Notes: generated by a model not told the origin, from the letters alone. DNA of 62,786 bases, filler included, from Dugesia japonica (GCA_001938525.1; 7 parts of 7 records of this genome joined end to end with filler, not necessarily neighbours in it); one strand, 5' to 3'; numbered from the whole stretch's first letter, positions 25,947-35,410 are shown. Numbers and translations: made by a program.

Positions 25947-27100
25947 TTTTAATACATTCTCTAATTCTTCATCACAGTTTAGTTCATCCATATTGAAAAA
26001 ATCATTGTTGTCCATAAATGTATCAATTATCATGTCTGTTTGACAAATTTCGTTTTTAATTTTTATTAGGTCAATTGTGTCCCCTCCAACATTAATTCAT
26101 TCCTTTTGGTTTACGTTTTCTTTAACTTTCTGGGAATTATTGTCAATTTTCTTTGACGTTGAAGGTAACATTGTTGTTATATTCTCTTCTTCCACAATCA
26201 TGCATTCTGGACTTTTATCCCATTGTTCCTTTCCCGTTTTTGGTTCCTTTTCTGATACCACTTTTCGTCTTTTTGTATTTGATTCTTCTCTTGTTTGTCG
26301 CAATTTTCTATTATGATATTTCTGTAATTATATTTTGTTGCATTTAAACTGTAGTGGATAAAGATTGATATCGTCTATCCATTCATTTTCAATTTGCAAA
26401 TATATTTCTCTCACTGCTTTTTTTTGTTAGTTTCTTTGTTAGTTTCCGCAATTAATCGTATAGTATATTTTTTTACTAGTAATTCGACCCATTTCTTTGA
26501 AGATATAATAAAATCATTATTAATATATCTCTCTAGATAAGTAATTTTCATAGGATATGGAACTTCCCGTTCCAAATTTTTATATTTAACAAATCTTTTA
26601 TTTTGAGTTAGTGTATCAATTATTATTACATTTAATCCATGAAATTCAATTTTAACTTTAATATATTTAAGAGGATTCCAAAAGATATGAATNNNNNNNN
26701 NNNNNNNNNNNNNNNNNNNNNNNNNNNNNNNNNNNNNNNNNNNNNNNNNNNNNNNNNNNNNNNNNNNNNNNNNNNNNNNNNNNNNNNNNNNNNNNNNNNN
26801 NNNNNNNNNNNNATTATTTGGCTTCAAATGTCGAATAACGACTTTATTTCTTTTATTATTCAGTTCCACAACTTTATTGCCTGTATTATTTAAATTTCTA
26901 AACAAGCACATTTCATTGGAATAACCCTTAAAATACCATAGGATTGTGCTATGCATAGTATAAATTGAAATTTTCTCCATAAAATTTGCCTTAATTGTAA
27001 TATTACTTATATCAACATTTTGAATACAAGTTCCTGATATACATCCACTCATAAATAATACAAATAGTAACAAATATTTAATTGCCGGGTCAGTGTTCAT
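25947..27100 (-). pseudogene. Post-integrase extension: signal peptide plus two FN3-like repeats and a charged tail
   Basis: In frame with integrase: MNTDPAIKYLLLFVLFMSGCISG, then STILWY...VVIRHLKPNN and IHIFWNP...YKNLEREVPYPMKITY (FN3 W...L.P..Y pattern). Continues through a frameshift and stops to the contig end. Confidence 0.5.
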
Positions 27101-27104
27101 TATA

Positions 27105-29030
27105 ATATTAACAGTTCCATCTTTTTTAACCTTTTCTTTAGATTTTTCTACTTCTGACACTTTTTTACAACGATTCGCGTGAACAATGATAGGTTCAGCC
27201 TTTTTATTTTTGACAGGTTTTAATTGTAATTTTGTATCAGTAGTCTTTTTAGGTTCTGACTTATTCAAATACACTAAATCACCAATTTTGATACCATGAT
27301 CTTTAGTATTTTTATCGTAATACTCTTTATAACTTTCCTGTTGATGTTTAATATTTAAGCTTGCTTGCTTCCATGCTTCTTGCATTCGCTCGATCATTAC
27401 TGTTTTATAATCTGGTACGTCCATATATTTAGTTGTGACTGTTAGAAAATTTAAATCTACTGGCATATTATTTCTCCGTAAATACATCAAATAAAATGGT
27501 GTTTCGCCTGTACTCACATNNNNNNNNNNNNNNNNNNNNNNNNNNNNNNNNNNNNNNNNNNNNNNNNNNNNNNNNNNNNNNNNNNNNNNNNNNNNNNNNN
27601 NNNNNNNNNNNNNNNNNNNNNNNNNNNNNNNNNNNNNNNNNNNNNNNNNNNNNNNNNNNNNNNNNNNNNNNNNNNNNNNNNNNNNNNNNNNNNNNNNNNN
27701 NNNNNNNNNNNNNNNNNNNNNNNNNNNNNNNNNNNNNNNNNNNNNNNNNNNNNNNNNNNNNNNNNNNNNNNNNNNNCGAAATACAATATTTTCCACAAAT
27801 ATTTGAGCTATGGTTTCTGCCTTTTGATTAGGAAGTGCAAATGCTTCCGGTCATTTAGTTAAATACTCACAAAATACTAGTATATATTTATTTCCGTTTT
27901 CTGTTTCTGGTAAAGGACCAATAATATCCATTGCTGTCATTTCCATAGGTGCTAATGGCACAGGCATAGGTTTTAGTGGTACCTTTAATTTTGTACCTGT
28001 ATTTTTCCTGGTTAAGCAAGTTTCACATGTTTTACACCACTTTTTAATATCTTGTTCCATCGTTTTCCAATAATATTTCATTTTAATTCTTGATAATGTT
28101 TTACGAATTGATAAATGACCTCTTAAAGTGCCATCATTCATCGGTATCTTTTGCTTATCTAATAACTGCTAATACAGTATTTTCTTGTTCATGATCGTCT
28201 TCCACAATTCTAGATAACTCATCAGCATTTGCGTTAGCTTTGCCTTTCCGATACCGAATTTCTATATCAAACTCTTGTAAACTTAATGCCCATTGAATTA
28301 ATCTACTTGCCGTATTACGATGAGTCATCAGCCATTGTAATGGACTATGATCCGTGTATAAATAAATCTTTTTGCCAATAAGATAATGCCTATAAGTTTT
28401 TACTGCAAACACTATTGCTAAAGCTTCTTTTTCAATTGTTGAATAATTTATTTTGTGTTTATTTAATTGACGACTTGCATATGCAATAACATGATTCTTT
28501 TCGCTCTCTTTTCGTTGTCCTAATACTGCTCCAAAGGCATAATTACTTGCATCCGTCATGAGTATAAATGATTTCGTCATATCCGGATGTCTTACAATAG
28601 GTTCTGATATTAATTTTTCTTTTAATGTTTCGAACGCTTGCTGCTGTTCCTGTCCCATTTAAATTGAGTTTCAAATCTGAGTAATTTATTTAGAGGTTCT
28701 GCTATACGTGCAAAATTCTGGATAAATATCCTGTAATATCCAGCTAATCCGATAAATTGCCTGACTTGTTTTACTTGTTTTACTTATTAAGTCAATTACA
28801 GATATAATTGATGCTCGATTAATTTTATCATATATTTCTTGTGGAATAGGTAACGGATACGTATCTTTTCCTGTAACACTATTCAACTTTCTGTAATCAA
28901 CACACACGTAATCTTAATTCACCTGATTTCTTTTCCACAGGAACAATTGGCGATAACCAAGGTGAAAAACTTGGTCGCAATATTTTATATTTCAACATCA
29001 AATCTATTTGTCTGTTATATTCTTCCCGAT
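27105..29030 (-). pseudogene. pol: Gypsy pol: RT (YxDD palm deleted), RNase H, integrase
   Basis: CVDYRKLN..DTYPLP..IDL jumps straight to QVRQFIGLAGYYR. RNase H TDAS/EKEALA/TDH/NANADELSR. Integrase HHCC zinc finger, MDIIGPLP and TGETPFYLMY. Confidence 0.92.
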
Positions 29031-29549
29031 NNNNNNNNNNNNNNNNNNNNNNNNNNNNNNNNNNNNNNNNNNNNNNNNNNNNNNNNNNNNNNNNNNNNNN
29101 NNNNNNNNNNNNNNNNNNNNNNNNNNNNNNNNNNNNNNNNNNNNNNNNNNNNNNNNNNNNNNNNNNNNNNNNNNNNNNNNNNNNNNNNNNNNNNNNNTAC
29201 TATTAACAAATGGTTTGTCATATCGTTTAACTTTTGCTGGTATAGGCTCACTAGGAACTTCTTGTACTGGTAAAATAGTTCCAATTCTCGTTTTAGCTTT
29301 TAATTTTATCGCTTTATCACTGAAATTTACAAATCTGGCTGGTACTGTTCGATTCGATATCGTAACTAATCCATTACACATTGGTAATTCATGTTTTTCC
29401 ATAAATTCTTCCTTAGGTTCGAATAAAAATTCTTCCAATGATTTATTTGTTGTATTCGCATAATATACCATTTTTTGTCTTGTTGGAAAAGTAACATCTT
29501 GATTTAAAAATACTTCATGTGCTTTATTTATAATTTCACCAGTGGGTCT

Positions 29550-29880
29550 ACTAATCAAATTACCCGTTTGCAAATCCATTGCTACTCCTTCTAATTGTTC
29601 CAATACATCCATAACAATTAGACATAGTACTGGGCTATCCCTCATCACAACTACATTTTGATTTATTACTTTTCCTCTAATACACAATTCAACTTTTATT
29701 AGTCCAATAATATTAATAGCATTTCTTGATATTGATCGAATAATTTCTTCAGTAGGTGACATGCTAATTAAATCTGCTGGATTCAAAACTTCCTCTGATA
29801 TAATAGTTACACTTGATTCTGAATCCAATATAGCATTAACTGAAGTTCCATTCAATTGTACTACTATTATTGGTTGTTTA
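29550..29880 (-). pseudogene. Retropepsin aspartic protease (DSG mutated to DSE)
   Basis: PIIVVQLNGTSVNAILDSESSVTII...CLIVMDVL. Same ORF (29004..30380) as the glycoprotein tail. Confidence 0.85.
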
Positions 29881-34584: not shown

Positions 34585-34846
34585 ATTAATTACAATTTCT
34601 CTCTTGATTTCTCGATTTCGTAAATTATATTGTTGTACTTCGACAATTCGATTCTTTCTTTTTCTGAGCACTGAAATTTGTAGTTATAACTACTAGAATA
34701 ACTTTCTGGGAAGTGACAGCTTCCCTTTTTTCAAACTGTTGAAAAAAACTAGAGGAAGTGATAGCTTCTCTTTTCAACAAACTACTAGAATATCTTTGGA
34801 AGGGATAGCTTCCAAACTACAAAATTCTAGTTTTTTCTGTTCGATT

Positions 34847-34858
34847 TCGGGCTCACCA
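34847..34858 (-). promoter_or_regulatory. Primer-binding site TGGTGAGCCCGA (closest to tRNA-Trp 3' end, 1 mismatch)
   Basis: TGG-initiated GC-rich 12-mer right after the LTR CA end and upstream of gag. Confidence 0.55.
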
Positions 34859-34862
34859 ATTA

Positions 34863-35410
34863 TGTCGGGATATACACGACACTTCAGCTCTACTTTCAAT
34901 TTAATATCTGACTCTGATCAATAGGTTGCGTCTCTGTCAATTTANNNNNNNNNNNNNNNNNNNNNNNNNNNNNNNNNNNNNNNNNNNNNNNNNNNNNNTA
35001 ATTTAACAAATTGACAATATCTTTCTTCAATAATTCAAATCAAATCGCATCAACTCTAATCAAAAATTCTAGCCAAAACTCTGATCACAAATTTTCAACA
35101 AAACTCTAATCAAAACTCTCAACAAAATTCTTCACAAAAATTCTGAACGANNNNNNNNNNNNNNNNTTTACAAAAATGCATTCATTTATATAGTGCTTTC
35201 TGTGCACACATACATATGGACTTTACACAATTTTCAAAAATTGATCGCATCAACCAATAATATTTTAACATACTCAAAATTAACTTTACGAGTATCATCC
35301 AATAAAATATTTATCAACTAAAATTTGATAAGACAATTATCCAATCAAATGATTTGGTCAAATCGAAATTCCATTGGTCGCACACCAATTTTACATTTTC
35401 GCTATCAACA
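34863..35410 (-). promoter_or_regulatory. Putative 5' LTR of the Gypsy element
   Basis: Ends ...gacA 4 nt before the PBS. TATA-like tatataaat on minus near 35185-35193. The TGTTG start at 35410 is a guess because there is no second LTR to confirm it. Confidence 0.5.

What the first reader, a model, noticed from the sequence alone, without database searches (positions are those of the whole stretch)
25947..35410. Gypsy retroelement with a chuvirus-like fusogen placed between gag and pol, apparently in one polyprotein
Seen: on the minus strand the order is LTR-PBS-Gag-X-glycoprotein-PR-RT-RH-IN-Y. The glycoprotein TM region (30530-30380) runs through a single TAG directly into ORF 29004..30380, which contains the protease. 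Established: env genes of retroviruses and errantiviruses lie 3' of pol, and chuvirus-type glycoproteins are known as captures in BEL/Pao elements. Inference: this is an enveloped, potentially infectious Metaviridae lineage with gag-env-pol order. It would be translated as a membrane-spanning polyprotein cut by signal peptidase and PR. I know of no described element with this layout, but cannot search.
Basis: partly seen in the sequence, partly recalled or inferred. Interest (0 to 1): 0.95.

Follow-up and report, generated by a model that had tools for sequence, protein, structure and literature searches.

The report
Dead gag-env-pol Gypsy endogenous retrovirus copy
This is a decayed, incomplete copy of a Ty3/gypsy-type endogenous retrovirus whose herpes-gB-like (class III) envelope gene sits between gag and pol, a real and unusual layout that has already been published for nematodes, flatworms and bryozoans.

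Summary
It runs putative LTR, PBS-like site, gag (capsid and zinc knuckle), an unassigned region X, a PF24664 'Monjiviricetes_fusion' glycoprotein with a transmembrane stretch, then protease, RT remnant, RNase H and integrase. It is not a mis-join: public single ORFs of 3,700-4,057 aa match gag, X, G and pol in the same order. All six N gaps are colinear with relatives.

The pol is Ty3/gypsy-type, with Ty3 as the best solved match. The envelope family folds like herpesvirus gB.

- This copy is a fossil. It has at least 17 stops or frame changes, about two thirds of the RT domain is missing, and only one candidate LTR lies in the piece.
- The layout is catalogued. Chary & Hayashi (eLife 2026; preprint 2023) describe GAG-ENV-POL Ty3/gypsy elements with gB-type ENV in Nematoda, Bryozoa and Platyhelminthes, citing Sacco et al. 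2022.

The single-polyprotein idea is supported for intact relatives, but only by sequence. The host was not identified. Verdict: a new, dead member of a known kind, of low to moderate interest.

The parts
35411..35722 (.). Upstream flank, unassigned. It could be host DNA or more LTR.
   Evidence: No ORF family, tRNA or Rfam match. The LTR start cannot be fixed without a second LTR.
34863..35410 (-). Putative 5' LTR. It holds two N runs (34945-34998 and 35151-35166) and a 25-nt tandem repeat at 35052-35148.
   Evidence: TG..CA-type ends read. Tandem repeat of period 25 with 3.9 copies. No second copy in the piece, so the bounds are provisional.
34839..34858 (-). Primer-binding-site-like sequence, starting TGG, 4 nt after the putative LTR end.
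   Evidence: Read directly. Not tested against a tRNA set; no tRNA gene lies in the piece.
34585..34838 (-). 5' leader with three copies of a 15-nt hairpin-forming motif (34709-34723, 34754-34768, 34798-34812).
   Evidence: Pattern search: 3 matches against 0 expected. The fold of 34690-34835 has z = -3.2.
33316..34584 (-). gag, broken. Capsid-like Retrotrans_gag domain at about 34197-34409, CCHC zinc knuckle at about 33574-33612. N gap 33640-33736 lies inside.
   Evidence: Pfam. Single-ORF relatives P0110, P0112, P0114, P0115 and P0012 match 34050-34530 (E down to 3e-17) and 33382-33633. Probable start ATG at 34584. gag plus X carries at least 5 breaks.
32379..33315 (-). Region X, broken, function unknown. 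It is conserved in relatives between the zinc knuckle and G.
   Evidence: No Pfam or PDB match. Homologous to the same position in P0008 (E 8.6e-9), P0112, P0114, P0115 and P0108. The AlphaFold single-sequence model is unusable, pLDDT 30.5.
30348..32134 (-). env, broken: a class III (gB-like) fusion glycoprotein of Pfam family PF24664. Ectodomain 30435-32134, hydrophobic transmembrane stretch about 30348-30515. N gap 31074-31158 lies inside.
   Evidence: Pfam E 1.6e-11, 2.6e-20 and 1.5e-6. tblastn to relatives E down to 1e-121, with one HSP across the gap. Hydrophobicity. The fold of relative P0006 matches herpesvirus gB at E 8.5e-14. 5-7 in-frame stops and 1-2 frame changes.
26414..30347 (-). 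pol, broken:
- linker
- protease 29586-29879
- RT remnant about 28782-28938
- RNase H 28269-28655
- integrase zinc domain 28001-28132
- integrase core 27776-27955, continuing into N gap 27520-27776
- MLV-IN-C-like region about 27155-27301
- C-terminal extension to 26414

N gaps 29031-29197 and 26693-26812 also lie inside.
   Evidence: Pfam. Domain cover against relatives. Nearest relative is the L001/P0001 pair at 63-76% identity. Ty3 is the best PDB match. Counts: 1-2 stops, 4 frame changes plus one across a gap, and two internal deletions relative to L001. One removes about 107-123 residues of RVT_1; the other removes about 68 residues between RNase H and the integrase zinc domain.
25947..26413 (-). 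3' remainder up to the piece edge, unassigned. No polypurine tract was identified and no 3' LTR is present.
   Evidence: No repeat of the 5' LTR, no family. The element therefore runs off the piece.

Best explanation
The piece holds one degraded copy of a Ty3/gypsy-type endogenous retrovirus, cut off at its 3' end by the piece edge. It belongs to the published 'GAG-ENV-POL' kind.

In intact relatives a single giant ORF encodes, in order:
- Gag (capsid and zinc knuckle)
- a variable region X
- a hydrophobic signal-like segment
- a class III (gB / chuvirus-G-like) fusion glycoprotein ectodomain
- a transmembrane segment
- one to three aspartic proteases
- RT, RNase H and integrase
- a long C-terminal extension

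The inferred working mode of an intact element is as follows. The polyprotein is threaded into the ER membrane, leaving Gag and Pol in the cytosol and the G ectodomain in the lumen. It is then cut by host signal peptidase and the element's own protease. That yields capsid, envelope and enzymes from one translation product.

Shown here: the domain order, the single ORFs in relatives, the hydrophobic segments flanking G, the gB-like fold and the Ty3-type pol.
Inferred: the membrane topology, the cleavage and any envelope function.

The copy in the window cannot do any of this. gag, env and pol are all interrupted and most of the RT domain is missing.
For: - Domain order in the window.
- G fused in frame upstream of PR/pol: P0004, P0009, P0020, P0104, P0108.
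- gag or zinc knuckle upstream of G in the same ORF: P0008, P0012, P0021.
- Single ORFs running from the gag region (capsid match; zinc knuckle detected by Pfam in P0110 and P0112 only) through G, PR, RT, RH and IN: P0110 (3,700 aa), P0112 (4,057 aa), P0114, P0115. Each matches the window's gag, X, G and pol in that order.
- All six N gaps are colinear with relatives, and three are shown to be in frame.
- Hydrophobic segment 3-25 residues before G and a transmembrane segment after it in relatives. The window's transmembrane stretch is in the protease frame.
- The AlphaFold model of the nearest G-only relative (pLDDT 74.9) matches herpesvirus gB over about 640 columns, Foldseek E 8.5e-14, probability 1.00.
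- pol: RT_RNaseH, RT_RNaseH_2 and Integrase_H2C2. The best PDB match is the Ty3 Gag-Pol, E 2.5e-15 for the window's own RNase H piece and 1.7e-128 for relative P0108.
- Decay: at least 17 breaks, stops of all three kinds, RVT_1 51 of about 158 residues.
- Literature: PMC13524379.
Against: - Only one candidate LTR is in the piece, and it is unverified.
- The X/G junction falls at an N gap where relatives differ in length. Continuity there rests on colinear order alone.
- No signal-like hydrophobic segment is found in the readable sequence just upstream of G in this copy.
- The source genome and its other copies could not be examined. The host phylum is unknown.
- Relatives' ORFs are gene predictions from metagenome assemblies. 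There is no evidence of translation, processing or particles.
Confidence: 0.85

Rival explanations
1. Chimera: a chuvirus-derived endogenous glycoprotein fragment was nested into an ordinary Gypsy element, or was joined to it by scaffolding across N gaps.
For: The X/G junction coincides with N gap 32240-32377, and the frames differ across it under the stated gap length. Solo chuvirus-like glycoprotein insertions are common in some genomes (PMC7642597).
Against: Same strand and colinear order with four single-ORF relatives across gag, X, G and pol. The G transmembrane stretch is in the protease frame. The best G hits are all polyprotein-embedded, at 35-43% identity, against 25-35% for stand-alone-length G proteins.
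Confidence: 0.04
2. A BEL/Pao element carrying a chuvirus glycoprotein (Anakin-like), misread as Gypsy.
For: Chuvirus-type G is best known from mosquito Pao elements (PMC7642597).
Against: No BEL/Pao families were hit. The RNase H, integrase and protease families are the Ty3/retrovirus type. Ty3 is the top solved match, and named homologues are gypsy/17.6-type pol. In BEL/Pao elements with an envelope-like gene (Roo, Tas, Cer-7), env is described downstream of pol.
Confidence: 0.02
3. In this lineage only env and pol were fused. The progenitor expressed gag-X as a separate ORF, giving three or two ORFs, as the eLife survey treats these elements, rather than one polyprotein.
For: Frames differ on the two sides of the gaps in gag and at X/G. 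The eLife survey searched for GAG, ENV and POL as separate ORFs, with up to 2 kb between ENV and POL. Several relatives start shortly before G (P0003, P0004, P0006).
Against: P0008, P0012, P0021, P0110, P0112, P0114 and P0115 carry gag or the zinc knuckle and G in one ORF. Gap lengths are only estimates, so frame differences across them prove nothing.
Confidence: 0.2
4. The copy, or its env, is functional: an active endogenous retrovirus or a host-domesticated fusogen.
For: One in-frame stop separates the transmembrane stretch from the protease ORF, and that ORF is 411 codons long.
Against: env has 5-7 in-frame stops and 1-2 frame changes. pol has frame changes and lacks most of RVT_1. The stops are TAA, TAG and TGA alike, so there is no code variant.
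Confidence: 0.03

Closest known systems
GAG-ENV-POL Ty3/gypsy 'errantiviruses' with HSV/gB-type ENV in Nematoda, Bryozoa and Platyhelminthes (Chary & Hayashi, eLife 2026, PMC13524379; preprint 10.1101/2023.10.26.564294)
   Same: Ty3/gypsy pol, a class III gB-like envelope, and env placed between gag and pol.
   Different: Those are intact multi-copy elements treated as three ORFs. This is a single decayed copy of unknown host. I could not compare sequences because no supplement is held.
Nematode endogenous retroviruses of Sacco et al. [quoted passage not shown]
   Same: By title and by the eLife citation: a metavirus that captured an RNA-virus glycoprotein, with the ENV and POL order flipped. 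From my memory of the abstract, unverified here: a continuous gag-env-pro-pol ORF, and a glycoprotein related to Chuviridae and Nyamiviridae.
   Different: The paper is not held, so no feature-by-feature test was possible. Nematode origin of the window is not shown.
Anakin and other BEL/Pao elements with chuvirus-derived glycoprotein (Dezordi et al. 2020, PMC7642597)
   Same: The same glycoprotein family (chuvirus-type, PF24664) carried inside LTR boundaries.
   Different: BEL/Pao pol, mosquito hosts, separate gag and polyprotein coding regions, and the envelope not between gag and pol. The window has Ty3-type pol.
Drosophila errantiviruses (gypsy, ZAM, Idefix)
   Same: Ty3/gypsy elements with an envelope gene.
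   Different: A class I F-type envelope of baculovirus type, placed 3' of pol and, by established knowledge, expressed from a spliced message. Here the envelope is class III, lies 5' of pol and is in frame with it.
Herpesvirus gB (class III fusogens)
   Same: The overall fold of the family's ectodomain: Foldseek E 8.5e-14, probability 1.00, about 640 aligned columns.
   Different: 10-13% sequence identity, TM-scores 0.31-0.45 on monomer models, and no PDB hit by sequence. The relation is in fold, not a close family tie.

Membership tests
Ty3/gypsy (Metaviridae-type LTR retroelement) | pol domain order PR-RT-RH-IN, with integrase last | tested here: met
   RVP, then RT remnant, RT_RNaseH, Integrase_H2C2 and part of rve, in that order on the minus strand.
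Ty3/gypsy (Metaviridae-type LTR retroelement) | RT/RNase H/IN sequences closest to Ty3/gypsy rather than BEL/Pao or copia | tested here: met
   Best PDB match is the Ty3 Gag-Pol 7q5b (E 2.5e-15 for the window, 1.7e-128 for relative P0108). Named homologues are gypsy/17.6-type. No formal tree was built, because most of the RT core is absent from this copy.
Ty3/gypsy (Metaviridae-type LTR retroelement) | Two long terminal repeats flanking the internal region | tested here: inconclusive
   No direct repeat pair in the piece. The 3' end lies beyond the piece edge.
Ty3/gypsy (Metaviridae-type LTR retroelement) | tRNA primer-binding site next to the 5' LTR | tested here: inconclusive
   A TGG-starting 20-mer lies 4 nt after a CA end. 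No tRNA set was available to match it.
Ty3/gypsy (Metaviridae-type LTR retroelement) | Gag with a capsid domain and a CCHC zinc knuckle | tested here: met
   Retrotrans_gag 27.1 bits, above the cut-off of 24.1. zf-CCHC 17.7 bits, below its cut-off of 20.8. Relatives' gag and knuckle regions align there.
Published GAG-ENV-POL Ty3/gypsy endogenous retroviruses | Envelope gene located between gag and protease/pol | tested here: met
Published GAG-ENV-POL Ty3/gypsy endogenous retroviruses | Envelope is a gB-type class III fusogen | tested here: met
   PF24664 above its cut-off in the window. The relative's model matches gB.
Published GAG-ENV-POL Ty3/gypsy endogenous retroviruses | Intact ORFs and multiple near-identical copies in the host genome | tested here: not met
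   This copy has at least 17 breaks and lacks most of RVT_1. Other copies in the source genome could not be searched.
Published GAG-ENV-POL Ty3/gypsy endogenous retroviruses | Host in Nematoda, Bryozoa or Platyhelminthes | not testable with these tools
   No near-identical named protein was found. Relatives come from unnamed metagenome contigs and mislabelled MAGs.
BEL/Pao with chuvirus G (Anakin-like) | BEL/Pao-type protease and RT families | tested here: not met
   No such Pfam family in the window or in 14 long polyprotein relatives scanned with Pfam.
Class III viral fusion glycoproteins | gB / VSV-G-type multidomain ectodomain fold with a central helix, followed by a C-terminal transmembrane anchor | tested here: met
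   Shown for relative P0006 (36% identical to the window over 594 residues): Foldseek hits to gB and a transmembrane segment. For the window itself it holds by homology only, because the gene is in pieces.
Class III viral fusion glycoproteins | Trimerisation and membrane-fusion activity | not testable with these tools
   No experiment was possible. This copy's gene is broken.

The most novel reading that the evidence does not exclude
The most novel reading not excluded concerns the whole group rather than this dead copy. These elements may really be expressed as one ER-threaded Gag-X-Env-Pol polyprotein, with an internal signal, a transmembrane anchor, and equal amounts of Gag, Env and Pol. 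Their uncharacterised modules may be functional parts of that unusual strategy, possibly in a host phylum not yet reported. Those modules are the conserved region X (with a sub-threshold ubiquitin-like hint in one relative), the multiple proteases, the ankyrin repeats, and the long post-integrase extension with hydrophobic segments.
Probability: 0.2. Interest if true: 0.55.

Novelty: new member of a known kind. Interest (0 to 1): 0.25.

Why it matters
Envelope capture is how a retrotransposon can become a virus. A class III fusogen sitting in frame between gag and pol is an unusual answer to that problem.

The layout was already reported in 2022 and again in the 2023 preprint (published 2026). 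This locus therefore adds only one more, dead, example from an unidentified AT-rich genome.

Its modest value is threefold:
- It is independent confirmation that the order is a family trait.
- It shows that public metagenome assemblies hold uninterrupted ORFs of 3,700-4,057 aa with the full gag-X-G-PR-RT-RH-IN order.
- It points to features the literature read here does not treat: region X, duplicated proteases and the post-integrase extension.

Tried and rejected
**Searches that found nothing useful**
- LTR pair search: no second LTR.
- tRNA and Rfam scans of the piece: nothing.
- Plus-strand and small minus-strand ORFs: no families.
- PDB sequence search with the G piece and with X: nothing meaningful.

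**Region X**
- No Pfam family.
- The single-sequence AlphaFold model had pLDDT 30.5 and is unusable.
- An alignment of X with full-length relatives (A2) smeared X across the polyproteins and was discarded.
- A ubiquitin-like lead rests on one sub-threshold hit in P0112, at the spot homologous to the end of X. The window's own sequence does not support it.

**Host identification, all failed**
- The exact-product look-up found nothing.
- The nearest proteins are unnamed or sit in MAGs labelled Turicibacter and Flavobacteriaceae.
- The RNase H search gave 69% identity at best.

**Other ideas rejected**
- Alternative genetic code: the in-frame stops are 7 TAA, 2 TAG and 2 TGA.
- Sacco et al. 2022 could not be read.

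- My script printed the bounds of all open stretches, so that I had references for the search tools. Note 1 repeats some of them, and such bounds imply where frames end. I list no breaks in this report.
- Before re-reading the operators' bar on look-ups, I fetched two short contigs of related retroelement fragments (L001 and L002). I used L001 only for counts and domain bounds, and made no further DNA look-ups of relatives.
- The alignment tool printed its own majority lines.

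
Full report
**What is there**

The piece (25947-35722) is about 29% G+C and codes on the minus strand. I scanned each stop-to-stop open stretch separately against Pfam. From the 5' end of the minus strand the hits are:

| Feature | Family | E-value |
|---|---|---|
| gag capsid | Retrotrans_gag | 4.9e-6 |
| gag zinc knuckle | zf-CCHC (weak) | 0.0038 |
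| Region X, about 1 kb | none | - |
| Glycoprotein, three stretches (profile 61-212, 390-539, 534-575) | PF24664 Monjiviricetes_fusion | 1.6e-11, 2.6e-20, 1.5e-6 |
| Protease | RVP | 3e-4 |
| RNase H | RT_RNaseH | 1.3e-40 |
| Integrase zinc domain | Integrase_H2C2 | 1.8e-16 |

A hydrophobic stretch follows the G ectodomain. It lies in the same frame as the protease ORF, with one in-frame stop between them.

Upstream of gag lie three further features:
- A leader of about 250 nt.
- A TGG-starting site 4 nt after a CA dinucleotide.
- A candidate LTR with TG..CA-type ends.

**N gaps, tested first**

I compared the residues relatives have between flanking matches with the codons in the window.

| Gap | Location | Result |
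|---|---|---|
| 31074-31158 | inside G | Crossed by one single-frame HSP in 13 relatives |
| 27520-27776 | integrase core | 83-84 residues against 86-87 codons, same frame |
| 26693-26812 | after integrase | Crossed by one HSP |
| 29031-29197 | between protease and RT | Colinear; length right to within about 1-3 codons; frames differ under the stated length |
| 32240-32377 | X/G junction | Colinear in order only |
| 33640-33736 | inside gag | Colinear in order only |

For the last two, relatives differ in length by hundreds of residues. I did not fill any gap or read its letters elsewhere.

**Is the envelope position a family trait?**

A full HMMER scan with the best G piece found 101 proteins. 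Eight of the best 21 are long polyproteins. Pfam scans show several layouts:
- G followed in the same ORF by protease(s), RT, RNase H and integrase: P0004, P0009, P0020, P0104, P0108.
- gag or a zinc knuckle upstream of G in the same ORF: P0008, P0012, P0021.

A second search found uninterrupted ORFs of 3,700-4,057 aa. They run from the gag region (capsid match; a zinc knuckle detected by Pfam in P0110 and P0112 only) through X, G, PR, RT, RH and IN: P0110, P0112, P0114, P0115. Each matches the window's gag capsid, zinc-knuckle region, X, G, protease, RT remnant, RNase H and integrase in that order.

This rules out a nested insertion or a scaffolding chimera as the likely cause. The window's G is closer to these polyprotein-embedded proteins (35-43% identity) than to proteins of stand-alone glycoprotein length (25-35%).

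**What kind of element, and what kind of envelope**

The pol families are those of Ty3/gypsy and retroviruses, and no BEL/Pao family appears. The best solved-structure match by sequence is the Ty3 Gag-Pol polyprotein. The E-value is 2.5e-15 for the window's own RNase H piece and 1.7e-128 for relative P0108. Named homologues are gypsy/17.6-type pol.

For the envelope I folded the nearest G-only relative, P0006, which is 36% identical to the window over 594 residues. I used a 32-sequence alignment, and the model had pLDDT 74.9. Foldseek matched herpesvirus gB structures over about 640 columns at E 8.5e-14 and probability 1.00. The class III assignment therefore holds for the family, and for this copy by homology.

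**State of this copy**

It is a fossil.
- A frame-aware lower bound gives at least 17 breaks (in-frame stops plus frame changes) from gag to pol: at least 5 in gag plus X, at least 6 in env and at least 5 in pol.
- Homology-guided counts agree. env has 5-7 in-frame stops and 1-2 frame changes. pol has 1-2 stops and 4 frame changes, plus one across a gap.
- The stops are TAA, TAG and TGA alike, so this is not a variant genetic code.
- Against five relatives, only 51 of about 158 RVT_1 residues are present, and no N run accounts for the loss. Against the nearest relative, about 68 residues between RNase H and the integrase zinc domain are also absent.
- No signal-like hydrophobic segment is readable just upstream of G.
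- Only one candidate LTR is in the piece, and the 3' end runs off its edge.

**How intact members probably work**

In relatives a hydrophobic segment sits 3-25 residues before the start of the G domain, and a transmembrane segment follows the ectodomain.

Gag and X stay in the cytosol, an internal signal starts translocation, the G ectodomain enters the lumen, a membrane anchor follows, and protease, RT and integrase are back in the cytosol. Cleavage by signal peptidase and the element's protease, and the resulting equal dosage of Gag, Env and Pol, are inference only.

**Comparison with what is known**

Chary & Hayashi (eLife 2026, PMC13524379; preprint 2023) make three relevant points:
- Ty3/gypsy elements of Nematoda, Bryozoa and Platyhelminthes carry only HSV/gB-type ENV, and their ORFs are arranged GAG-ENV-POL.
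- They credit Sacco et al. 2022 for nematode endogenous retroviruses with this flipped order.
- The Chuviridae-like glycoprotein of mosquito BEL/Pao elements also occurs next to gypsy POL.

Sacco et al. is not held. My recollection that it reports a continuous gag-env-pro-pol ORF and a chuvirus- or nyamivirus-like envelope is unverified memory. The BEL/Pao case (Anakin, PMC7642597) shares the glycoprotein family but not the pol type or the gene order.

**Verdict**

It is wrong about novelty and about this copy's potential. This is a new, dead member of a known kind, and the host is unidentified.

**Open points**
- The function of region X is unknown.
- The LTR and primer-binding site are unverified.
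- The other copies in the source genome have not been examined.

- One search printed open-stretch bounds, and note 1 repeats some of them.
- Look-ups 27 and 28 fetched two short related contigs before I re-read the bar on look-ups.
- The alignment tool printed its own majority lines. I did not use them.

Noticed in passing
window 34709-34812 (minus), within the leader 34585-34838: A 15-nt motif (GAAGCTRTCMCTTCC) occurs three times, 44-45 nt apart, between the PBS-like site and gag, against 0 expected by chance. Each copy can form a short hairpin, and the 146-nt stretch folds with z = -3.2. It may be a packaging or dimerisation signal.
   Followed up: partly
window 35052-35148: A 25-nt tandem repeat (3.9 copies, 75% matches) inside the putative LTR.
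   Followed up: no
relatives P0004, P0008, P0021, P0104, P0114, P0115 (proteins): Two or three aspartic-protease domains per polyprotein. In P0114 and P0115 one lies after the integrase. The window shows one protease domain.
   Followed up: no
relatives P0104, P0112, P0111 (proteins): Ankyrin repeats lie between G and the last protease in P0104 and P0112 (position not checked in P0111, precomputed hit only). P0104 also has a C2H2 zinc finger there. These look like host-like modules inside the polyprotein.
   Followed up: no
window 32379-32639 (end of region X) and P0112 residues 740-835: The end of X aligns to P0112 residues 740-828 (E 3e-10). That overlaps a sub-threshold Pfam ubiquitin hit in P0112 (23.6 bits against a cut-off of 25.4). 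A ubiquitin-like domain just before the envelope signal would be interesting, but the window's own sequence gives no such hit.
   Followed up: partly
relatives P0108, P0009, P0004, P0104 (proteins), C-terminal extension after integrase: An extension of 500-1,700 residues after the integrase core carries one or two strongly hydrophobic segments. An MLV-integrase-C-like motif is present in P0104, P0108 and P0110. No other family is assigned.
   Followed up: no
L001 (GCA_051646305.1, labelled Turicibacter sp.) and P0009 (HBK71150.1, labelled Flavobacteriaceae bacterium): Animal-type retroelement genes are binned into bacterial metagenome-assembled genomes and annotated as bacterial proteins. This is contamination of public MAGs. 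The Turicibacter contig carries the nearest pol relative (63-76% identity), which hints at a gut-dwelling animal source.
   Followed up: partly
window 28700-29030 and 28132-28269: Relative to the nearest relative, two internal stretches of pol are absent with no N run to explain them: most of the RT domain, and about 68 residues between RNase H and the integrase zinc domain. The first is confirmed against five relatives, the second against one.
   Followed up: partly
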